This document shows positions 9,830-55,930 of a DNA stretch of 64,000 bases, piece by piece (position 1 is the stretch's first letter; the number at the start of each line of letters is the position of its first letter). Location: assembly GCF_016432865.1 (NCBI RefSeq), contig NC_067401.1, positions 238,452,001 to 238,516,000 of the forward strand, read 5' to 3'. The DNA comes from Antechinus flavipes (Eukaryota). The notes below the pieces were generated by a model that searched no databases, was not told where the DNA came from, and saw nothing but the letters and a program-made list of their open reading frames with translations. Position numbers and translations under genes: made by a program.

Positions 9830-10590
9830 CTGGAGAGAAATTTGGAACTATGCCCAAAAGGCTATAAAACTATGCATACCCTTTGATCCAACTGGGTCCC
9901 AAAGAGATTATAAAGGAGGGGAAAGGACCACAATTACAAAATGTTTGTAGTAGCCCTGTTTGTAGTGGCAAGGAAATTGAGTGGATTACTAGAAGTTGGG
10001 GAATGGCTGAATAAGTTAAGGATAAGAATATAATAGAATATTATTGTTGTATAAAAAATGATGAGTAAGTTGATTTTAGAAAAGCCTGGAAAGGCATGAA
10101 CTAATGCTAAGTGAAGTGAGCAGAACAAGAAAATATTGTACACAGCATCAACAAGATTAAGTGATGATCAACTGTGATGGATTTGATTCTTTTCAACAAT
10201 GAGGTGATTGATTCAAGGCAGTTCCAATACACTTGTGCTGGAAAGTACCATCCACATTCAGAGAGAGAACCAAGGAGTCTGCTTATGCATCAAAACATAG
10301 TGTTTTTACCTTTTTTACTTTTTTTTTTTTTGGTTGTTGTTTGTTTGTTGCATTTTTTCTTGTGATTTTTTTATTTTTAATCTGATTTTTCTTGCACAGC
10401 ATGAAAAATATGGAAATTTATTTAGGAGAATTGCACATGTTTAACCTATATCAGATTGCTTGTTGTCTAAGGGAGGGAGGAAGGGCAGGAGAGAGAGAGA
10501 GAGAAAAATTTGGAACACAAGGTTTTGCAAAGGTGAATGTTTAAAGTTATCTTTGCATCTATTTGGTAAAACAAAATACTATTTAAAAAT
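9830..10590 (+). mobile_element. L1 3' end
   Basis: ccaaccattctggagagaaatttggaactatgccc...aatttggaacacaaggttttgcaaagg and an A-rich end. Confidence 0.85.
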
Positions 10591-15317: not shown

Positions 15318-16350
15318 TCTGGAGATCACTAATCTTGAAACTAGAAGGAAGATTAAAAAGGCCTTTAAGCAATGAGAAAAATGGCTATCATAATGCCTGT
15401 GTATTTAATTCTAAAGTCAAAAAACATTTACTAAGGTTTTTCTATTTATGAGTCATTGTGCTAAGTGCTGTGTATATGAAGAAGGCAAAAAACATATAGT
15501 CCTGGCTCTCAAGTTCACAATCTAATGATGGAAGCAAGTATGAAAATAGGCATGCAGACATATGTGTATAACATATACAAATGTGGGTATGTATATACAG
15601 GGCACAGATAAAATAGATAAAAGATAATCTCACAGGGGAAATCACTAGCAGCCAGATGGGGAGAGGTAGAGTCTCTTGTAGATGGTGGGAATTGAGATGC
15701 ACCTTGAAATTTGATGAACCTTTGCATATTTGAATAATATATATTTGCATATTTGGGTAATATACCTTTCCCTAATGATGCTAGTTAAGATAGATATCAT
15801 TCTATTTGGCTAAAATATACAGTTCATAATATGATAATTAATAATAAACATTTACATACCATTTACTATGGGCTAGACACTGTATTAAGCACTTTACAAA
15901 TACCATCTCATTTGATTATCAGAATATCAGCAGAGCATATAATCCTCATTTTGTAGGTGAGAAAACTGAAGCAAGTGGCTTGCCCAAAGTGTCACAGTAA
16001 GCAGATATTTGATACAAGATTTGAACTTCTGACTCTAGGTCTTGTGCTCTAGCCATTGTTTCACCTAACTTCCTCCAGTTTGTGAATGTCTGAGTGGACA
16101 GACATGGTGATGGTTTCCTCTTTGTGGGGAACTCCTGGTATTGAAACTCCTTCATGAAAACTCATCTGTCCTTTATAGTCTTAGATAGTTGGCTGATTCT
16201 CTCTGAGGTTAAGTGTTTTGCTTAGGGTCAATATATCTTATAAAATGTCAGAGGAAGACTTGAATCCAAGACTTTTTGATTCCATGGCAAGTTATTGATT
16301 GATTACTTAATAAATTTAATTATTTATGTATATTTTATCATCATTCTTTT

Positions 16351-16456
16351 CAAAAGTTCTTTTCAAAGACAACTAGCAGTATTATAACCAATTCATTATA
16401 GAATTCATTATAAAATTGTATATAATACTGCTAGTTGTCTTTGAAAAGAACTTTTG
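16351..16456. repeat. Perfect inverted repeat: 36-bp arms, 34-nt spacer
   Basis: caaaagttcttttcaaagacaactagcagtattata (16351-16386) is the exact reverse complement of 16421-16456. Confidence 0.97.
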
Positions 16457-16914
16457 CATTAGGGGTCAACTTTAATGGAAAATCATGATAAAATATACAG
16501 AAATAATTAAATTTATTAAGTACAAAAATTTTTAAATGATCATTGTTTATAAAAATCCATAGGTTCCTTTTTAATTGATATCTAAATAAAGGTCCCTCTG
16601 GATGTAATAGAACACCAGAGTATAGTGTAATTGCAAATGATTTAACAGTAAACATTCTCTCGTATTCTCTGAATGTAAACAAGTGAATATGTCTACTAGA
16701 CCTTGTTGGTATATGGGAACAAATATCAAGCTAGCCCTAAAAATGTGTCAACATCCAATGTAATTTCATCTTTTATTTAAAAAATTGATTTGAATTTTAA
16801 AAATTGATGTTCCCTTGGAGGCATACTTCTTTTCATTCACTCCTAGGTATGCTTTTGAAAAGTCTTCATGGGAATTAGTGAGATAGGGTTATAGTTGTGC
16901 TAATGTTAATATAT

Positions 16915-17488: not shown

Positions 17489-17950
17489 GAATGAATACTT
17501 AATGTGGCACAAAACATAGTTTCTTCACCCTTTTTTGTTATTGTTTCTTGTTTTCCCCTCTTTGATCTGATTTTCTTGCTCAGCATGAAGAATATGGAAA
17601 TTTATTTAGAATTGCACATATTTAACATGTGTTTGATTGCTTGCTGTCTAGGGAACAGGGGAAGGTAGGAGAGAAGGAGAAAAATTTGGAACACAAAGTT
17701 TTGCAGAATTGAATGTTGAAAATTATTTTTGCATGCATTTTGAAAAATAAAATATTATTAAAAATAAATTTCTTTATTCATTCTCCATAATTTTCTCCCT
17801 AGATATAGCTGGCTTTTCTATCCTGAGTCTATTGGAATTTCCTTGAATCACTTCACTGTTGAAAAGAGCCATGTCCATTATAATTGATCATCATATAATC
17901 TTGTTGTTCCTATGTATAATGTTCTCTTGGTTCTGCTCACTTTACTTGCA
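17489..17950. mobile_element. L1 3' pieces in opposite orientations (possible micro-inversion)
   Basis: 17489-17768 is the plus-strand L1 terminus; 17775-17950 is the immediately upstream L1 segment on the minus strand. Confidence 0.7.
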
Positions 17951-18169: not shown

Positions 18170-19570
18170 TAGGGTGGCAAATTATATGGAAAGAAATGGA
18201 AATAAATTAAATGTCCATTGAATAGGAAATGGATACACAAGTTGTGTTGCATGAATGTAATGGAAAATTACTGTGCTGTAAAAAATGATAAGCATGATAA
18301 AGTCAAGAAATTTAAAGACTTTTGCAAACTGCTACAGAAAGAAGGGAGAAGAGCCATGAAAGCAATAAGCACACTGACTACAACAATAGAAATGCAAAGA
18401 ATAGCAACCACAAAGCATTGAAATTTGGCTTTATGAAATTATGGAGAACAGATTTGGCCTTATGGAAGAGATTTGGGAACACACTTACCCTGCTCCTTTG
18501 TACAGATTGGGGTTCATGAGTGTGGAACATTGCATATAATGTTAGGTTTTTTTAAAATTTCTTTTTTTGTTAAATCTTTTTATTTTCAAAATATATGCAT
18601 GGATTATTTTTGTTTTGCGGGTTTTTTATGTGTAGTTGATTTTGCTGAATTATTTCTTTTTCTTTCCCTTTTTCTTTTTTTAAAAATTTTTTTATGCTCT
18701 AAATCACTATTGTTTAAAGAAATGCATATTAAGGCAACTCTGAGAGACCACGTCACACCTTTCAGATTGGCTAAAATGATAGGAAAAGATATGATAAATG
18801 TTGGACAGAATATGGGAAAACTGGGACACTAATACAGTGTTGTGGAATTGTGAATCAATTCAACCATTTTGGAGAACAATTTGGAATTCTGCCCAAAATG
18901 CTGTCAAAGAATCCTCATGTACAAAAATGTTTGTGGTAGCCTTTTTGTAGTGGCAAGGAATTGGAAACTGAGTAGATGCCCATCAGCTGGGGAATAGTTG
19001 AATAAATTATGGTATATGAATGTTATGGAATATTATTATTCTGTAAGAAATGATGAACTGGTTTCAGAAAAGCCTGGAAAGACTTATATGAACTGATGCT
19101 AAGTGAAGTGAGCAGAACCAAGAGAATATTGTCCATAGTAACAGTAAGATTTTGTAATGATCAGCTGTGATGGACTTGGCTCTTTTCAATAATGAGATGA
19201 TGCAAGGCAGTTCCAATAGACTTGTAATGGAAAATGCCATTAGCATTTAGAAAAAGAATTATGGAGACAATGTGGATCAAAGCATAGTATTTTCATCTTT
19301 GTTGGTTGTTTGCTTGATTTTTTTCTTTCTTGTGTCCCCCCCCCCTCCCCGCTTTGATCTGATTTTTCTTGCACAGCATGATGAATATGGAAATTTATTT
19401 AAAAGAATTGCTTATGTTTAATCTACATCAGATTGTTTGCTGTCCAAGGGAGGGCAGAGGGTAGGAGAAAAATTTGGAACACAAGGTTTTGCAAAGGTTA
19501 ATATTGAAAATTTTCTCTTTATGTGTTTGGAAAAATAAAATATTACTAAAAATAAAATAAAAAATTATAA
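18170..19570 (+). mobile_element. Two tandem L1 3' regions of different subfamilies
   Basis: L1 ORF2-end/3'UTR strings at 18170-18710 and 18720-19570 (ccacgtcacacctttcagattggctaaaatg...tttggaacacaagg). Confidence 0.85.
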
Positions 19571-21359: not shown

Positions 21360-21962
21360 AAAAAATAATAACTTTTAAAAAAATTAAAATTAAAAAAATA
21401 TAATAGCTTTTTCATTTTCAAAATACATGCAAAGATAGTTTTCAACATTCACCCTTGCAAAACATTGTGTTCCAATTTTTTCTCCCTCCTTTTCCCACCC
21501 ACTCCCCTAGATAGCAAATAATCCAGTGTATGTTAAACACGTACAATTCTTCTGTACATATCTCTACATTTATCATGCTGCACAAGAAAAATCAGATCAA
21601 AAAGGAAAAAAAAAAGAGAAAGAAAGCAAAAAAGCAGGCAAACAACAACAAAAAGGTGAAAAAACTATGTTGTTCCAACATATAAAGGACTGCTTGCCAT
21701 CTAGGGGAGGGGGTGGAGGGAGGAAGGGGAAAAAAAATCGGAAAAGAAACGAGTGCAAGGGATAATGTTGTCAATATAAAGTAATCATTAAATAAAAAAT
21801 AAAAATTAAAAAAAAAAAGAAAAAGAAAAAACTATGTTGTGATCCACATTCAGTCCCCAGAGTTCTCTATCTGGATACAGATGTCTCTCTTCATCACAAG
21901 TCTATTGGAATTGGCCTGAATCACCTCATTGTTGAAAAGAGCCACATCCATCATAGTTGATC
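21360..21962 (-). mobile_element. L1 3' end hosting a younger L1 insertion
   Basis: tagctttttcattttcaaaatacatgcaaagatag...gagccacatccatcatagttgatca. Confidence 0.85.
21674..21824 (+). mobile_element. Young 5'-truncated L1 (151 bp) with perfect 16-bp TSD
   Basis: TSD gaaaaaactatgttgt at 21658-21673 and 21825-21840; ggactgcttgccatctaggggagg..., CpGs retained, A-rich tail. Confidence 0.88.
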
Positions 21963-25149: not shown

Positions 25150-25880
25150 CTAGTGTTGTATTACTTTGTGTCTGTAGAACTAAAGTTAGAAGATACCCCA
25201 AAAGACAATGGAAGAATCTGTATCCCAAAGATCTCATAAAAAGGGAAAAGGACCCACACGTAGAAAATATTCATAGCAGCTCTTTTTGTGATGGGGCAGA
25301 ATTGGAAATTAAGGGAATGCTCCTCAACTGGGAAATGACTGAACAAGTTGTGATATACAAATATAATGGAATATTATTGTTCTGTAAGAAATGATGAGCA
25401 AGTGGGTTGCAGAAAAACCTGGAAAGACTTACATGAATTGATGCTGAGTGGAATGAGCAGAACCAGGAGAACATTGTGCAGAGTAACAGCTACATTGTGT
25501 GATGATCAACTATGATGGACTTAGCTCTTCTCAACAATACAGTGATCCAGGACAATTCCAAAAGACTCATGATGGAAAATGATAATCCACATCCAGAGAA
25601 AGAACTATGGAGACTGAATATAAATTGAAGCATACTATTTCCACTTTTTTGTTTTTTGTTTTTCTTTCTTATAATTTTTCTCTTTTATTCTGATTCTTTT
25701 TTTCACAATATAACTAATGTGGAAATATGCTCAAAATGCTTTCTGTTTTGGAGAAGGAGAAGGAAGGCAGGAAGGGAAAACAATCTGGAACTCAAAATTG
25801 TACAAAACAAATGTTGAAAACTGTCTTTACATGTGTTAATTGAAAAAAATAAAATATTAAGTATAAAAAAATAAAAAAGG
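25150..25880 (+). mobile_element. L1 3' end
   Basis: gaatctgtatcccaaagatctc...aatctggaactcaaaattgtacaaaac and an A-rich tail. Confidence 0.85.
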
Positions 25881-30262: not shown

Positions 30263-32209
30263 GAACTCTTACTCAAGAATTAGGAGGTGAAATAGAATAA
30301 ATGCTCAAAAATCACCCAACTTAAAAAAAAATTGTCAGGATATATATTAGGCATTAATTTTTTTTTTTAGAAAAAATGGACATTTAGAATTTATTTCATC
30401 AATAAAATCAACAAGCATTTATTAAATGACTACTATGTGTCAGGTACTATGGATGTTCTCTTGGGTACATTATGGATGAACCCTTGAGTTCATATGGGTT
30501 ATGTGGGAACTGACCGAATTGTATATTTGTATATTTGTAAGAGGTATGGATGATTGGGGAATCAATAATCAGGACCAAGGAGAAAATCACATGGCTATTT
30601 TTCCTATTTCCTATTTATATTTAATTTTTAAAGGATAAACTTGTTATATTATTATTCTCTAATTCTAAGAAATGGTAGATAGGATGAAGATAATAAATAA
30701 GTCTCAATTCCAGGTTTGTGACAACCAAGAAAGATAGCAAGATTGGGAATTCAGTGGAGAGACTACCTGTGTCTATGAAATTATGGATCTTTTAAAGTAT
30801 TGAGGTCATTACCAGCCTTAATCTATGTCATGTGATGTTTTTAAAAGAATGAGGAATATTGTGAAATGAAATAATAATTAATTACATGCCTTCCTGTTAT
30901 TTTCCGAATTCTGTTCACAGGCTTAACTTCAGGGACTCCTCTAAGCCACAGTTAGGATGCTCAGCTGTGCTCTCCTGAAAATGTTTTTGTCCCTAGAAGT
31001 TTGGAAATCACTATACTAAGTCATTCACTCAATTTTAAAATTAAAGTGTGCCATTGCACATCCAGGCATACTTGCTTAGCTTTCAGACTCTACCAAAAAG
31101 CAATATTCCATCTTGCTGGCAAGGAAGGCATGCTGAATATGGAGTCAGAGGCTAATAAGACAAAAAGATCCTAGATCAAGATTTGGAAGAAACACTAGAG
31201 GCCCTCTTGTCCAAATTTGTTATTTTACAGATGAAGAAACTGAGGTAAAAGGAGGTCAAATAAATTGCCTGAGGTCGCCGAGGTAATAAAGTCAGAGGTT
31301 GGATTTGAATTTAGATCCTCTGACTATAGATCCTGGGTTCAAATTGAAATCTGACTGACTGACTGTATGTATGTATGTATGTGTATGTTCCAGAGTAAGT
31401 AATTTATTCTCTCTGGGTTTCTATTTCCTTATTTTTGAGATAGCCTCAAAGGTCTCATGCTGAACTAAATCCATGTGCCACTCTATGGACATCAAGTAGG
31501 TAAAGCTATGTCCTGGCAAATATGGGAGACAAGTAAAAGAACTAATTTAGCTCTTCATTCTATCTAAAATAAGCTAGAGGGATAGAAATGGGATAGAGTT
31601 AAAGTCCGAAAGTAGAACTTAGATTGTATAATTCTTAAATCATTATGGAATTTATCTATCAGAAGGGTCCTTTGAAATGATCTTATCTGAGATCACAGTG
31701 TAGTCAAATAGCTTTAGAACTGTGATTAAAACCTAGGTCTTGGTTCTTGGTTCAGTATTCTTTCTAGCATACCACAGTGACTCTGCCTCCACATAGATTT
31801 AGTCTGGCAATGATCTCAGTACTTTAAAAGATCCATGATTTCACAGGCATGGATAACTTTCCCATTGAAATTACAATCTTGCTGTCCTTTGGCAAATAGT
31901 TTTATGACTTCCTTTTATTCTCTTCCTCCAAAAATATAATTTTTCAATTAACTAAGGTAAAATTAGTTTTAGTTTAAGAATCTTATGATGCCTTGAGAAA
32001 TAGATGGAGATTCCTTGGTTGTCACAAACTTGGAGTTGGGACTTACTATCTTCCTCATCCTATATATGGCTTCTTAGAATCAGAAAATGATAATAATATA
32101 TACTACAATAATTGCATTCAATTTGGAGAAGGAAACAGGCTATAATGTATCAATTCATGGCTCTTGTAACCCTTATAATCAGGCCCATCACAGATTCATC
32201 ATTTCTTAG

Positions 32210-32720
32210 ACTTTTTTTTTTTTAAAGAAAACAAACAAAAAAGATGAAAATACTAAGCTCTGTTCCACATTCAGTCTCTGTGATTTTTTATCTAGATGTG
32301 AATGGCATATTTCATCCCAAGTGTACTAGAATTGTCTTGAATCACTGCGTTTGTGGAAAGAGCCAAATCCATCACAGTTGATCATCATGTAATCCTGTTG
32401 CTACTATGTGCAATCTTCTCTTAGTTCTGTTCAGCATCAGTTCATATAATTCTGAAATCAGCCTGCTCATCATTTCTTATAGAACAATAATATTCCATGA
32501 CATTCATATACCATAACTTATTCAGCCATTCCCCAAATGATGAGCAACCACTCAATTTCCAGTTCCTTGCCACTACAAAAAGAGCTGCCACAAACATTTT
32601 TGCACATGAGAATTCTTTCCTTCTTTTATGATCTCTTTGGGATATAGACTCACTATAGTTCTTTGATCTTCCAAATTGTTCTCCAGAATGATTGGATCAT
32701 TTTACAATGCATTATGTTTC
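32210..32720 (-). mobile_element. L1 3' region
   Basis: gttccacattcagtctc...ccataacttattcagccattcccc...ctccagaatgattggatc. Confidence 0.85.
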
Positions 32721-37650: not shown

Positions 37651-37809
37651 AATGTATAGTAATTGACACTGATGAACTTACATATTCATCAGGGTACGGC
37701 AGTGACTTAAATACAAGAAGTCTATTTGAGAGTGGGTATTAAAAAGGGGATTTAAAGCTGGGAAATGATATTAGCTACATAAAACAAGTTATACTAGTAA
37801 TATAAGAAA

Positions 37810-38030
37810 TGGCATAGTGTGGTATGTAGAACTGACCTTGAAGTCAGGAAGATTTGGATTATTATTCTCCCTCCGTTGGCTGTGTGATCTTGGTCACATC
37901 ACTTAATTTCTGTTTTCCAGACAACTCTCAAAGCCTATGAATTTCAGAGAAGCTGTTAATTTGAATTGGTAGACAGAATTTCCTCAATTGGGACTTCCTA
38001 CATCAATAAAATCACAAATCAGGTCCCCAA
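37810..38030 (+). mobile_element. MdoRep1-like SINE
   Basis: CORE head plus caactctcaaagcc...gaatttcctcaattgggacttccctacatcaataaaatcac tail. Confidence 0.7.
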
Positions 38031-38879: not shown

Positions 38880-39078
38880 TATCAGTCTTCAATGAATCAG
38901 TAGAAAGATTTCAGGGGGTCTCTAAACTTGAATAGGAAAAAAAATCCTACATTTTTATTTTCACTGATCTTTCCCTTGCAATCTTGTGTATTTTATTTTA
39001 TGCAATTAAAACATTCTGGAAAGGCTTCCCTATATTGCCAAAAAGATACATAACACACAAAAAAGTTAAGAACCCCTA
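38880..39078. mobile_element. Non-autonomous hAT fragment (third copy)
   Basis: tgtattttattttatgcaattaaaacattc...aaaaagttaagaacccct. Confidence 0.55.
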
Positions 39079-39849
39079 AGTTCACATCCTTCTTATAATG
39101 TGTATGAACTCTGTGTTCACAGGCAAATCACTTTATATAAACTATTAGTGCCCCCAGGAAAATCTCTTAGACTATTAAATTACAGATGAGAGCTTTCTCT
39201 CCATCACTGAAAACAGTTTGTGTATATAGAGTTCCCAATGTTGATGACATAACAGATTTGGGTGCACACATATACAAATTCCCCCTACATATATGTCAAG
39301 TAAATAAGAGATACCTATGAAATATGAATTGTGGCATAATGAATAGAGCTTTATACTTGGAATCAGGAAGACCTGAATTCAAATCTTGCCTCTGCTACTT
39401 AGCTGTTAAATCCTTGGCAGGATCTTTATCTTTACTTTGCCTTAGTTTTCTCCTCATAAAATGAGGGGTTTCAATTCAGCCTCTAAGTTCCTGGTTCTAA
39501 ATCTATGATCCTAATAGAGCATTTATGAAACACTGATTTTGCATAGGACACTGTAGTAGGTGCTGAGAATCCTGCCCTCATAAAGTTTGCGTCTGATAAA
39601 GAAATATGAATATACAGATAACTATAAAAGGCATATATAAAATAAAATACATGTGTTTGTATGTATATATTCAATATATAAATATAGAATGTTCATATAT
39701 ACACACACATATATACATGTACACACAAACATATATATATATTTATATATATATATATATAAACATAAACACAAATAATAAAACTACTAGGTGAGAACTA
39801 GTAGAGGGAAGAAAGTATTCATGGACCAGAGGTTTATGAAATGTGTGGA

Positions 39850-42127: not shown

Positions 42128-43329
42128 ACTATCCTTTATTCTCACATTGGCCATGTCCAAACACACAAATCTCATTCATTTTTCATCCTGAGTCTATCAC
42201 CTCTCTTTTGGAAATGGGATGCATGCATCCTCACTGGTCACCTGGAATCACTGTTAGTCATTATGTTGATTAAATTTCTTATTTTTTTTCAAAGTTAAAG
42301 GGGAACATTTCAGAGAAAACTGGAAAGACTTTTATGATCGATATAGAGTGATGTGAGTAGAACCAGGAAAACAATTTATATAATTGTAGAGAAACTACCC
42401 CCTATCTGTAGCATGGGGATAGAGGACGTCATGTATGACTCGAAGCAAGATAAGAATAGTTATGTTTCTAATATCTCTCCCCCGCCCCCATCCTTCTCCA
42501 AGGGAAATATTAATTCCTACCAGGAGGGAAGCAAGAAGTTGGGGCCAGAGTCATATAACTAGCAAGTGAGGTGACAGGACTTGAACCCTGGTCTTCCTGA
42601 TTTTCAAGCTAGCTTTAATGTACTATGTCATGCTGCCAGTCTTCAAAATTAGAGACTTTTTGAGTTCAACATAGGTATCTAGTTAGTGATCTTGATATAA
42701 TCCTTTTAAAAAAATATAGCTAGGTGGTATAATGGTTGGAGAACTGCACCTAGAATTAGGAAGACCCTGTGTGTTGCGGGATAAGACATGTAATCTCTGT
42801 CTACCTCTGTTCTACAACTGTAAAATGGGGATGATGATAGTACCTACTCCTAGAATTGTTGTGAAAATCAAGTGAGATATTTATAAAAGCACAGTGCCTA
42901 CCACATAGTAGGTACTTCATAAATGCTTATTTCCTCCCTTCCTTCCTATAAAGGGAAGCTGGAATTGTGCTTTGAAACACCCATTTTTGAAAAGATAGTA
43001 TAATGATCTGAAAAGTCTTAAAAATGTGTGATCTCTTTTACACTGAAAAGCAAATGGTAGAGGGAAAGCTTAGCTTTTTTAGACAAGCTTCACATCTAAA
43101 GAAAGCTTGTTGTAGCTTCCAAACCCCATTTGTTTCTCTGCTGAATACAAATCCCAGTTTATCAGTTTGCATTTATCTCCTGAAGAATAACTCTGAAGTC
43201 AAGAATTAATTCTCAATTCTTTAGGGAAAACTTCCATGTTCAGCATTAATAACTAAGAGACACCACCATCTTTTTCAGCAAACATTGAAGATGAATAATT
43301 TTTTGCTATAATTTCTGACCTAGAGTCAG

Positions 43330-43560
43330 CAGTGCCTGGCAGATAGAAAGCCCACCTTATAATCAGAAAGAACTGGGTTCAAGACCTTGAGTCTTCTGGG
43401 TTTCTAACACATGCTGTTTATATGACCCTGGACAAATCAGTTAACTTCTCAGTGCCCCAGGCCACTCCCTAAGGATACAATTTACAAATTACTGATCTAC
43501 ATTAGTGGAAGCAATTTCCACACTGGAGCTACCTCATACCAATAAAATCATAGGTCTGAA
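43330..43560 (+). mobile_element. MdoRep1-like SINE
   Basis: ttaacttctcagtgccccaggccactcc...ctacattagtggaagcaatttccacac...accaataaaatcataggtc. Confidence 0.7.
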
Positions 43561-45860: not shown

Positions 45861-46739
45861 CACCACCTTGTTAGCAAAAATAATTAATTAAAATACGAAG
45901 CTACCAGATGGCTGGCAAGGGTGAGCTTTTTACCCATATGTTATAGCCCCCCTTGTAGATGAAACAGGATAGTGCCTTGGGGTCTCTCTCTTGTGTTTTG
46001 CCTCAATTTGATGTGGCACTTCTCCTGTTGACAGCACAAAAATTCCTAATGATAGTTCTGATGGTCAGATAGAATTGCTAATATTATGGCCATTTCTTCT
46101 CTGCCTTTTCAGTTGAACATTGTGCCATTAATTGAACAGGTGCTTTTTTCTCAGTTGAGTAGAGTGTCCCTAAAGTCAAAATATGGCCATAGAAGCACAA
46201 CTGTTAGACTAAACCAAATTTGGTCACTCTCTGCTATGGCATTGGAAAATGTCACTGAGAAAGTACATAGGACCTGAAGTTGCCAATGAAACCAGCAAAG
46301 CCACCCAGAATGTTGGGTGGTCTGGTACAACCAAGGCAAGTTGATGGCCTTGCCTCTGTGAGATGGACCTGGGTGGGAAAAAATAGTCGTTTTCTAACTA
46401 TAACTAAGTTGTCCATCTACCACAAATATATCTTTTGTTTCTAATAGAAAAGTATATCACTTTATAGGTCGCTGAAACATTTCAAATCATAAGTCAATAA
46501 ATGAAATGCATTAATTATGCTCTTATTATTTGCTATCTACTGTGCTAAGTGCTGATGATAAAATACAAAAGTAAAACAATCTCTGCCTTCAAAGTGGTTA
46601 CATTCCAATAAGGAAGAGAACATATGGAGAGGAGCGGTGGCTAGAGAAAGAATTATGGTGAGGGGTATAACAGGATAATAATTGACAAAACTTTTCCAGT
46701 GACATTTGTAGTATTGATTTATTTGATTTCTAGAGCAAG

Positions 46740-46940
46740 TGAGGCAGTATGGCATGGTGGATAGAGAGCCAACCTTAATGTCAGGCAGACTGATTCATTT
46801 CTTCCTTTGATGTACTTAACCCTTTAGTGTTCTAGACAATTTTAAGCCTTTAAGTTGCAGAGAAGGTATGAAGTGCAATGGTAGAATGAATTATGTGGCC
46901 ATAAATTTCCCTTTATCAGTGATATCACAGGTCTGGTTCC
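46740..46940 (+). mobile_element. MdoRep1-like SINE
   Basis: ggcatggtggatagagagcc...taagttgcagagaaggt...gatatcacaggtctggttcc. Confidence 0.7.
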
Positions 46941-47381
46941 TATCTCAGACAAAGAAAGGAAGGGAACCCATGGGGGTAGGGAGGAAAACAACTGGGGAAA
47001 GGTAAAGCTATATTGTCCCAGGGAGTACAAGCCCATGACTTAGCTCTATTCAGGCATTGTGTAATGCCGATTGATGTGATATAATAGATCAGACATAAGA
47101 CAGATCCCTTTGGTTGTCTTAATAGACTGCATATAGTCAGCTGGGACTTTCTGGGTCCCTTTGACATAGTCTGAAAATGAAAGATACAATGAATTATTTG
47201 GATTAAATGTTTCAGCCTCATTCATTCCATCAGTACTTGTACAGACACAGAGAGCAGGTCATTGTTTCCTTTTTCCCAGTGAGCCTTTTTGATGATGTGA
47301 GGTTGGGTCAGGATTTACTTTTTACTTACATATGCAGTTTTAAAGCCATCTCTGGGAGGTGTGTATATAGCTTCTATGTGA

Positions 47382-47416
<35 letters not shown>

Positions 47417-47634
47417 ATGTGTATATAAGTGACTCTATACATTCTATTAAGATAGACAGCCAAAGGTCTGATCTATTATATAATATCAGAAACATTACAC
47501 AATGCCTGAATGGAGCTAAACCATTAGGCTTGCTTCCCTGGGAATGTAACCTCATCTTTATCCAGCTGTTTTTCTCCCTGCCCCCATGGATACCCTTCCT
47601 TTCCTTCTCTAAGTTAAGATAATACCGTGATATC
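46921..47634. repeat. Long imperfect inverted repeat (~200-bp arms, ~290-bp spacer)
   Basis: 46921-47138 aligns to the reverse complement of 47431-47634, including perfect 19-bp (47048-47066/47493-47511) and 16-bp (47079-47094/47466-47481) blocks. Confidence 0.93.
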
Positions 47635-48779
47635 ATTAGTTATTGTGTGTGAAACTTTCATGTATTATAAGTCACAAAGCTAGATTAACTTTTATATATA
47701 GATTACATGTAAATCTTATACCTCTAAGGCAGATTTGGTCTTTTTTTTGAGTTGTGTGAGTAATATGTTGAAAATGGTTATGATTTTCCTTTATATAACA
47801 AGAGTGAATAATTTATTAGATACAAAGCTATGGATTCTGTGATGGTCTCGACTTGGAAAGAACCCACTTGCCCCATAATAAATTTGCTAGTTACTGTTTA
47901 AGTAACATTGCCACTTTTACAAACTCATGCTTCTCAGTCTCACCTGGATGAAAGATAGTCCCCAACCAGTAGTTAAATGCCAGAGAAATCCTGGAAAGAA
48001 AAATAACTTACTTCTGACAAACCTTGTAGTTTCTAGGAAGAGAAGCTTTGTTAATTCCTGTTTTGATAGTGTTCTCTTCATAATCACATTTTATTTCTTA
48101 GATCTTACTTTCTTGTTAATAATACTTAGTTATCATACATATCCAGATTCTTGGGAGGTAAGTTAATGTTATTCTTACTATCAAACCCTCTTTCATTTGG
48201 ACTCCCTTATTGTATGCTAAATAGCAGAGATGTTCAGGTCACAGTCTTATGAATTGGCTAATGACTCCCAGGTTCTAAGTTGATAAATTTCTTGGGGTTT
48301 GTGAAATGTGTCCCCAGAGCAACTGTTGACCAAATCTGGCAATCAGCCATATTTGAATATTCACATTCTTCTCAGAACAGCTGGAAACCCAGCAGTACAT
48401 GATTCATTGGCTTTATCGGTGGTTTCATATTGAATAAAGTAGCTTTATGAAAATCAATAGAGTGACTACAATTACCAAGTGCATTACTTCAGAGATATTA
48501 AGAATCATAAATCAAATGTGACAGCTGAAGAATAATGATATTATGTACAAACAAGAAGGAGTGCTATCAGCAGGGTCAGAATACTTTTCTATTATTTCTT
48601 AGATATTTCTTTTTGAAAATAAGCTAATGATATTTGTTTTGTTTTTTATCTGACACTATTAAGATACTTTTTATGATATTTGCCAAGGTCAAACATATAA
48701 CTCTGCAACCACTGGTAGGCTGTTGGAAGGGTGAAATAATTTAATTTTAAGAAAATTTTGTTAAAATGCTTTCTATTTG

Positions 48780-55798: not shown

Positions 55799-55930
55799 NN
55801 NNNNNNNNNNNNNNNNNNNNNNNNNNNNNNNNNNNNNNNNNNNNNNNNNNNNNNNNNNNNNNNNNNNNNNNNNNNNNNNNNNNNNNNNNNNNNNNNNNNN
55901 NNNNNNNNNNNNNNNNNNNNNNNNNNNNNN
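55799..55930. other. Assembly gap (132 N) inside L2 sequence
   Basis: Direct reading. Confidence 1.

What the first reader, a model, noticed from the sequence alone, without database searches (positions are those of the whole stretch)
46921..47634. Large diverged fold-back: ~200-bp inverted arms around a ~290-bp spacer
The arms are roughly 75-80% identical in the core by hand alignment, with perfect 19- and 16-bp blocks, and are not any SINE/LINE I recognise. This is therefore not the usual pair of oppositely oriented repeats. The outer ends share gatatcac, which on the left is the tail of the adjacent MdoRep1-like SINE, suggesting a local inverted duplication after the SINE inserted. The alternative is an undescribed long-TIR fold-back transposon. 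If transcribed, it would form a long dsRNA stem (potential ADAR substrate, endo-siRNA source, or splicing/circRNA-modulating structure). Mismatches are a mix of G-U-compatible and incompatible, so I see no strand-specific selection signal.
Basis: partly seen in the sequence, partly recalled or inferred. Interest (0 to 1): 0.7.

Follow-up and report, generated by a model that had tools for sequence, protein, structure and literature searches.

The report
Old local inverted duplication beside SINE
About 215 bases of non-coding marsupial DNA, including the last 20 or so bases of a neighbouring SINE, were copied backwards and pasted 290 bases downstream tens of millions of years ago; the two copies have since drifted apart like neutral DNA, so this is a real but ordinary scar of DNA copying, not a new transposon or a shown RNA structure.

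Summary
The fold-back is real. The arms are 46920-47139 and 47430-47635. They align over 201 positions at 82% identity (73-78% with gaps; blastn E 8e-30), around a 290-nt spacer holding (TG)16.

It is not a transposon. The outer 18-25 nt of the left arm are the 3' tail of a complete CORE-type SINE (46745-46942), and four other copies in the window end at the same point. The right arm carries only that tail piece plus a reversed copy of the SINE's downstream flank. So the repeat formed after the SINE landed, by a local inverted duplication with the left arm as source.

The shared "gatatcac" lies in a palindrome (TGATATCA). It therefore also reads as a 9-bp direct repeat and mimics a hAT-type target duplication; that reading fails.

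The pasted copy is abutted on both sides by a roughly 30-bp direct repeat (47406-47433 and 47644-47675; 2 of 4774 genomic controls score as high). This suggests a target duplication.

Divergence (K2P 0.21, 8 indels, G.U 9 vs A.C 13, longest perfect run as expected) looks neutral, and the age is roughly 30-47 My.

Other agents of this scan have noted similar local inverted duplications elsewhere in this genome.

The parts
46745..46942 (+). Complete tRNA-head/CORE-type SINE. Its 3' tail (...ATCAGTGATATCACAGGTCTGG) forms the outer end of the left arm.
   Evidence: An iterated nhmmer profile aligns model positions 1-208 to 46745-46937. Other tail-bearing copies (43327-43559, 37809-38024, 39063-39262, 16293-16111 minus strand) stop aligning at the equivalent of 46941-46944 and have unrelated downstream flanks.
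46920..47139 (+). Left arm, the source copy: the last ~20 nt of the SINE plus ~197 nt of its unique 3' flank.
   Evidence: It is contiguous with the full SINE, and it aligns to the reverse complement of 47430-47635.
46919..46928 (.). 10-nt perfect palindrome GTGATATCAC at the outer edge of the left arm. The counterpart GTGATATCA is at 47627-47635. Because it is a palindrome it also reads as a 9-bp direct repeat.
   Evidence: Read from the sequence. The TSD scan found GTGATATCA at 46919-46927 and 47627-47635.
47140..47429 (.). Spacer: original sequence between the source and the insertion point. It contains (TG)16 at 47384-47415.
   Evidence: No significant similarity to the arms or flanks. TRF finds the microsatellite.
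47430..47643 (-). Right arm, the pasted reverse-complement copy. The strict alignment ends at 47635. Positions 47636-47643 may still be SINE-tail derived.
   Evidence: The copy keeps the SINE-consensus AATGA where the left arm has AGTGA, and it shares the derived T in GATATCAC.
47406..47433 (+). Direct repeat copy A, abutting the inner end of the pasted copy and overlapping it by 4 nt (TGAC). Its TG run has since expanded.
   Evidence: Local alignment with 47644-47675, score 15 against 6.6 +/- 1.7 for junction-sized genomic controls; 2 of 4774 controls reach it.
47644..47675 (+). Direct repeat copy B, abutting the outer end of the pasted copy (TGTGTGTG AAACTTT CATGTATTATAAGTCAC).

Best explanation
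This is an old, single-locus, DNA-level inverted duplication. A CORE-type SINE inserted first. [quoted passage not shown] About 30 nt of the target were duplicated on either side of the insert. That points to fill-in of a staggered break, or to a return upstream of the departure point. The two arms have since diverged neutrally (K2P about 0.21, several indels), and the TG run expanded to (TG)16. Shown here: the inverted repeat, the SINE tail inside both arms, the polarity (left is the source), and the neutral-looking divergence. Supported but post hoc: the flanking direct repeat. Inferred: the molecular pathway and the age (about 30-47 My). No function is indicated. If the region is transcribed the RNA would fold into an imperfect ~200-bp stem, as any inverted repeat would.
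For: (1) The inverted repeat is highly significant. (2) The left arm begins inside the SINE. Four other SINE copies share homology up to ...ATCACAGGTCTGG and then diverge. So 46920-46942 is SINE sequence, and the right arm's outer end is a copy of it. (3) The right flank holds no more of the SINE: there is no SINE-profile hit on the minus strand at 47644-47900. The left arm is therefore the source. (4) Both arms carry T in GATATCAC where the family consensus and the other copies have A. The right arm keeps the consensus AATGA. (5) No other copy of the arms occurs in 64 kb, whereas a control inverted pair at 17814/19101 belongs to a family with 8 copies in the window. (6) A direct repeat abuts both ends of the pasted copy. 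(7) Decay looks neutral: ts:tv is 22:14, there are 24 gap columns, G.U vs A.C is 9:13 (p 0.52), and a longest perfect run of 19 or more is expected in 58% of simulations. (8) The four-point template-switch model allows inverted plus direct repeats from one switch-and-return event (PMC5453318).
Against: There is no outgroup or orthologous locus, no genome-wide copy count, and no repeat library, so 'single locus' rests on 64 kb and on the SINE-tail argument. The direct repeat was found post hoc, includes a low-complexity TG run, and is not significant when wide windows are used (7.6% of controls). If the direct repeat is real, the switch-point order is 3-2-4-1. Types in which point 4 precedes point 1 were not observed among short human-chimp events (PMC5453318), so a simple fork switch may not be the pathway. 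An 8-10-nt palindrome sitting exactly at the outer boundary is unexplained.
Confidence: 0.8

Rival explanations
1. A non-autonomous DNA transposon or fold-back element with ~200-bp terminal inverted repeats, for example hAT-like with an 8-bp target duplication TGATATCA flanking 46928-47627.
For: GTGATATCA occurs as a perfect 9-bp direct repeat at 46919-46927 and 47627-47635. The sequence after it starts CAGG, a hAT-like terminus (my own knowledge, not tested). hAT elements and their MITEs are present in dasyurid genomes (PMC4408412).
Against: TGATATCA is a palindrome, so the direct repeat follows automatically from the inverted repeat. The supposed left terminus CAGGTCTGG is the normal continuation of the SINE tail seen in four other copies. 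If an element had inserted into the SINE tail, that remainder should lie to the right of the element, but the right flank is TTAGTTATTGTG. No other copy exists in the window. DNA transposons cover only 1.13% of the devil genome (PMC4408412).
Confidence: 0.04
2. An RNA-mediated copy. A read-through transcript starting in the SINE carried its 3' flank (3' transduction), was reverse-transcribed with severe 5' truncation, and inserted nearby in the opposite orientation with a target-site duplication.
For: The copy starts inside the SINE tail and runs into the flank. A ~30-bp flanking direct repeat resembles a target-site duplication. In the copy's sense orientation a (CA)16 run lies 14 nt past its 3' end. 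Such runs can arise from A-rich tails (my own knowledge).
Against: There is no poly(A) or A-rich run at the 3' junction. The + strand has no run of four or more T between the SINE end and 47270, so a Pol III transcript would not end at 47139. SINEs with LINE-derived tails are recognised through that tail (PMC3403934), and a read-through RNA would lack it at its 3' end. Landing 290 nt from the source is very improbable for retrotransposition but expected for repair synthesis.
Confidence: 0.05
3. Two independent insertions, in opposite orientation, of an interspersed repeat family that I cannot name without Dfam or Repbase.
For: Inverted pairs of repeats are common, for example 17814/19101 in this window. 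No repeat library was available.
Against: The shared segment spans a SINE-tail/flank junction. No family other than the SINE plus this particular flank would reproduce that junction. Other SINE copies do not continue into arm-like sequence. There is no further copy in 64 kb.
Confidence: 0.03
4. Whatever its origin, the hairpin is maintained by selection as a dsRNA element (editing substrate, small-RNA source or splicing modulator).
For: The predicted stem is very stable.
Against: Eighteen per cent of aligned positions mismatch and there are 8 indel events. There is no excess of wobble-compatible changes on either strand. The perfect blocks are no longer than chance predicts. There is no Rfam family match beyond a sub-threshold hit on the TG run. 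No evidence of a gene or of transcription was found.
Confidence: 0.05

Closest known systems
Template-switch mutations (four-point model; Loytynoja & Goldman 2017, PMC5453318; Monttinen & Loytynoja 2022, PMC8794818)
   Same: One switch-and-return event places a reverse-complement copy of nearby sequence and creates a hairpin-capable inverted repeat. The model also allows an accompanying direct repeat.
   Different: The copied fragment here is ~215 nt, whereas that work addresses short events. If the flanking direct repeat is real, the order of switch points is 3-2-4-1, and types in which point 4 precedes point 1 were not observed in human-chimp or human-human comparisons.
Microhomology-mediated replicative repair (FoSTeS/MMBIR) and templated insertions at double-strand breaks
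   Same: These produce a local templated copy in inverted orientation, bounded on both sides, with a possible duplication of the target. This comparison rests on established knowledge, which PMC5453318 names as related mechanisms.
   Different: Junction microhomology cannot be scored after ~20% divergence. Only a 4-nt overlap (TGAC) at the inner junction is visible.
Long-TIR or fold-back DNA transposons and MITEs (e.g. hAT-derived MITEs of marsupials, PMC4408412)
   Same: They share the fold-back shape, and an apparent 8-9-bp direct repeat sits at the ends.
   Different: The ends here are SINE-derived, the direct repeat is a palindrome artefact, no second copy was found, and there is no true target duplication outside the arms.
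Inverted SINE pairs (Alu-type inverted repeats that form dsRNA)
   Same: Both give a potential long dsRNA stem in a transcript.
   Different: Only ~20 nt of each arm is SINE. The rest is unique flank.

Membership tests
Local inverted duplication (template switch / templated repair insertion) | A reverse-complement copy of nearby, otherwise unique sequence | tested here: met
   The arms match each other only. No other copy exists in the window. The metagenome scan gave only 19-21-nt chance matches.
Local inverted duplication (template switch / templated repair insertion) | Source and copy can be told apart by continuity with older sequence | tested here: met
   The left arm is continuous with a complete SINE. 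The right arm has only the last ~20-25 nt of the SINE.
Local inverted duplication (template switch / templated repair insertion) | An outgroup shows the pre-duplication state (an empty site) | not testable with these tools
Short template-switch mutation sensu Loytynoja & Goldman | The return point (4) lies downstream of the departure point (1), as in all observed types | tested here: not met
   If the flanking direct repeat is taken as real, point 4 precedes point 1. The test is inconclusive if the direct repeat is chance.
Cut-and-paste DNA transposon with long TIRs / MITE | A target-site duplication immediately outside the inverted termini | tested here: not met
   The only flanking direct repeat is the palindrome GTGATATCA, which lies inside the arms. 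Nothing outside 46919/47636 matches.
Cut-and-paste DNA transposon with long TIRs / MITE | The termini belong to the element, not to a neighbouring repeat | tested here: not met
   The outer 18-25 nt of the arm are the SINE's 3' tail.
Cut-and-paste DNA transposon with long TIRs / MITE | Multiple dispersed copies in the genome | tested here: inconclusive
   There are none in 64 kb. That only excludes families with far more than ~50,000 copies.
LINE-mediated retrocopy with 3' transduction | A poly(A) or LINE-type tail at the 3' junction | tested here: not met
   In the copy's sense orientation the 3' end ...GAGTCA is followed by CTTATATACACATG and then (CA)16. There is no A run.
LINE-mediated retrocopy with 3' transduction | A target-site duplication flanking the insert | tested here: inconclusive
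   A ~30-bp direct repeat is present. It was found post hoc and is long for a target-site duplication.
Inverted pair of a known SINE | Both arms align to the SINE family over most of their length | tested here: not met
   The SINE profile covers only the outer ~20 nt of the left arm and gives no hit on the right arm.

The most novel reading that the evidence does not exclude
This locus may be one instance of a recurrent class in this dasyurid genome: templated inverted insertions of 100-300 bp of local unique sequence, flanked by target duplications of tens of bases. Short template-switch events in primates were not seen to produce that geometry (return upstream of departure), so it could point to a distinct repair pathway or a reverse-transcriptase-assisted one. 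Supporting hints are two more unique-sequence fold-backs in the same 64 kb and many similar, unchecked notes from this scan.
Probability: 0.12. Interest if true: 0.5.

Novelty: new member of a known kind. Interest (0 to 1): 0.15.

Why it matters
By itself it matters little. It is a dated, well-resolved example of how a long hairpin-capable inverted repeat arises in one mutational step from unique sequence and then decays. The SINE tail serves as an internal marker that settles source, copy and order of events. It is a useful caution that a palindromic end can mimic a transposon's target duplication. It would matter more if a genome-wide census showed that such inverted pastes with target duplications are unusually frequent in dasyurids.

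Tried and rejected
There is no read depth, expression, editing or small-RNA evidence.

2. A metagenome scan with the 19-nt perfect core gave six contigs, all 19-21-nt chance matches.

3. An exact look-up of eight ORF translations from the region found none in the protein collection. The costly homology search would therefore have been uninformative, and I skipped it.

4. The Rfam scan gave only a far-sub-threshold mir-297 hit on the TG run.

5. Pfam on the five longest ORFs of the window found nothing. The bacterial promoter/terminator scan is irrelevant here and also found nothing.

6. A full-text search for the SINE tail and the arm core sequences in papers found nothing relevant.

7. The search of earlier findings by sequence came back blank, which means nothing.

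8. The weak direct repeat 46866-46898 vs 47169-47201 scores about z 3 against shuffles, and one of 100 shuffles equals it. I treat it as probably chance.

9. The hAT-like 8-bp target-duplication reading was considered and rejected because of the SINE-tail continuity.

Full report
**Observation**

The region was read directly. The repeat finder reports four collinear inverted segments between 46938-47139 and 47430-47619. blastn of 46900-47660 against the whole window gives the two reciprocal minus-strand matches at 73-78% identity, E 8e-30. nhmmer gives E 5e-26.

A gapped local alignment runs 46920-47139 against the reverse complement of 47430-47635:
- 201 aligned positions, 165 identical (82.1%)
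- 22 transitions and 14 transversions
- 24 gap columns in about 8 events
- K2P distance 0.208

The spacer is 47140-47429 and contains a perfect (TG)16 at 47384-47415. Folded as RNA the element gives -303.5 kcal/mol against -195 +/- 6 for shuffles. That follows directly from the inverted repeat.

**What the arms are**

Neither arm has any other match in the 64-kb window. A control inverted pair at 17814-17947/19101-19234 belongs to a family with eight copies in the window. This excludes only very abundant families. The decisive evidence comes from the SINE on the left.

An iterated nhmmer profile started from 46735-46945 finds 34 tRNA-head SINE copies in the window. A handful of them carry the same tail. 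The copy next to the fold-back aligns over model positions 1-208 at 46745-46937.

With a longer query (46700-46960), the other tail-bearing copies stop aligning at the equivalents of 46941-46944. Alignments show them sharing ...CAATGAAATCACAGGTCTGG and then running into unrelated flanks.

So 46920-46942, the outer end of the left arm, is SINE sequence. The right arm (as reverse complement..TAATGATATCAC-GGTAT-TATC..) contains a copy of that tail piece and nothing more of the SINE. The SINE profile gives no minus-strand hit to the right of 47643.

Both arms have T in GATATCAC where the family has A. The right arm keeps the family's AATGA where the left arm now has AGTGA.

The repeat therefore formed after the SINE inserted. 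It copied a SINE-tail/flank junction that exists only at this locus. The left arm, continuous with the whole SINE, is the source.

**The transposon reading**

A scan for target duplications found a perfect 9-bp direct repeat, GTGATATCA, at 46919-46927 and 47627-47635. At first sight this looks like a hAT-type 8-bp target duplication around an element starting CAGG.

But TGATATCA is its own reverse complement (on the left, GTGATATCAC is a 10-nt palindrome). The direct repeat is therefore an automatic consequence of the inverted repeat.

The supposed left terminus CAGGTCTGG is exactly what follows in the other SINE copies. An element inserted into a SINE tail would leave that remainder to its right, where the sequence is instead TTAGTTATTGTG.

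I reject this reading. Why a palindrome sits exactly at the outer boundary is unexplained.

**How the copy was placed**

The pasted copy (47430/47434 to 47635/47643) is abutted on both sides by a direct repeat: 47406-47433 (TGTGTGTG..TGCATGTGTATATAAGTGAC) and 47644-47675 (TGTGTGTGAAACTTTCATGTATTATAAGTCAC).
- Using 40-nt windows that abut the two junctions, 2 of 4774 equally spaced genomic controls reach the observed score.
- Without the TG run, 5 of 4812 controls reach it.
- With wide windows the signal is not significant, at 7.6% of controls.

The repeat was found post hoc, so I rate it as likely but not certain.

It implies that about 30 nt of the target were duplicated. In the four-point description of template switching (PMC5453318) the order of points is 3-2-4-1. 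That paper reports that types in which point 4 precedes point 1 were not seen in human-chimp or human-human data, because the return would require reopening the new duplex. So a staggered break filled in around a templated insert, or an MMBIR-like event, fits at least as well as a simple fork switch.

A (TG)n tract at the target is a plausible stalling or breakage site. That is inference only.

**RNA-mediated rival**

A read-through SINE transcript with 3' transduction would explain a copy that starts inside the SINE tail and a target duplication. Several points count against it:
- There is no poly(A) at the 3' junction.
- The + strand has no run of four or more T between the SINE end and 47270 that would end a Pol III transcript at 47139.
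- Tail-recognising LINE partners (PMC3403934) would not see their tail at the end of such an RNA.
- A landing 290 nt from the source is very improbable.

**Selection and age**

- Transition mismatches split 9 (G.U on the + strand RNA) to 13 (G.U on the - strand RNA), p 0.52.
- A perfect run of 19 or more is expected in 58% of simulations at this identity and length.
- Identity is uneven (57-87% in 30-column windows) but shows no layered core.
- Nothing suggests maintenance of pairing.

In the Tasmanian devil, hAT-1_MEu copies differ by 0.35. The paper takes that high distance as a sign of an ancient transfer and puts the common ancestor of the four Australian orders that carry the element at about 60 Ma (PMC4408412). 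Pairing the two figures is my own step, and the distance is a gamma-corrected ML estimate, not a K2P value; it gives about 2.9e-9 per site per year. At rates of 2.2-3.5e-9 the arms' K2P of 0.208 corresponds to roughly 30-47 My. This is a rough inference.

**Context**

No ORF in the region looks coding. The five ORFs of 110 aa or more in the window have no Pfam match. Rfam gives nothing real. Whether the locus is intronic or transcribed is unknown.

Notes from other agents of this scan say the genome is a dasyurid marsupial and list many local inverted duplications elsewhere in it. These notes are unchecked leads, not evidence.

**Limits**

The N run at 55799-55930 was not touched. The six metagenome contigs fetched were compared with the element only once and were chance matches.

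**Verdict**

This is a real, old, local inverted duplication that includes the end of a SINE, probably with a ~30-bp target duplication, and it is decaying neutrally. It is an ordinary member of a known class of mutation. The transposon alternative is contradicted, and function is neither shown nor suggested.

Noticed in passing
window 30522-30828 and 31791-32092: Another inverted repeat that is unique within the window: ~300-nt arms, 72% identity, 962-nt spacer, no other copy in the window. Possibly another old local inverted duplication.
   Followed up: partly
window 16270-16400 and 16409-16557: A near-palindrome with ~130-nt arms (84.5% identity) and an 8-nt spacer. The inner 43 nt are 95% complementary, so identity is layered. 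The left arm may overlap the head of the minus-strand SINE at 16111-16293.
   Followed up: partly
window 46866-46898 vs 47169-47201: A weak 33-nt direct repeat (73%) between the SINE body and the spacer. It scores about z 3 against shuffles and is probably chance, but it remains unexplained.
   Followed up: partly
window 17814-17947 / 19101-19234: An inverted pair of an interspersed family with 8 copies in the window (e.g. 25448-25578, 32312-32434, 10110-10243). An ordinary repeat pair, used here as a control.
   Followed up: partly
window 21476-21534 / 21677-21735: A 59-nt inverted repeat (76%) of purine/pyrimidine-rich low-complexity sequence, 142 nt apart.
   Followed up: no
window, whole: There are 34 tRNA-head SINE copies in 64 kb, and only about five or six of them carry the ...GAAATCACAGGTCTGG tail. 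GC content is 34%.
   Followed up: partly
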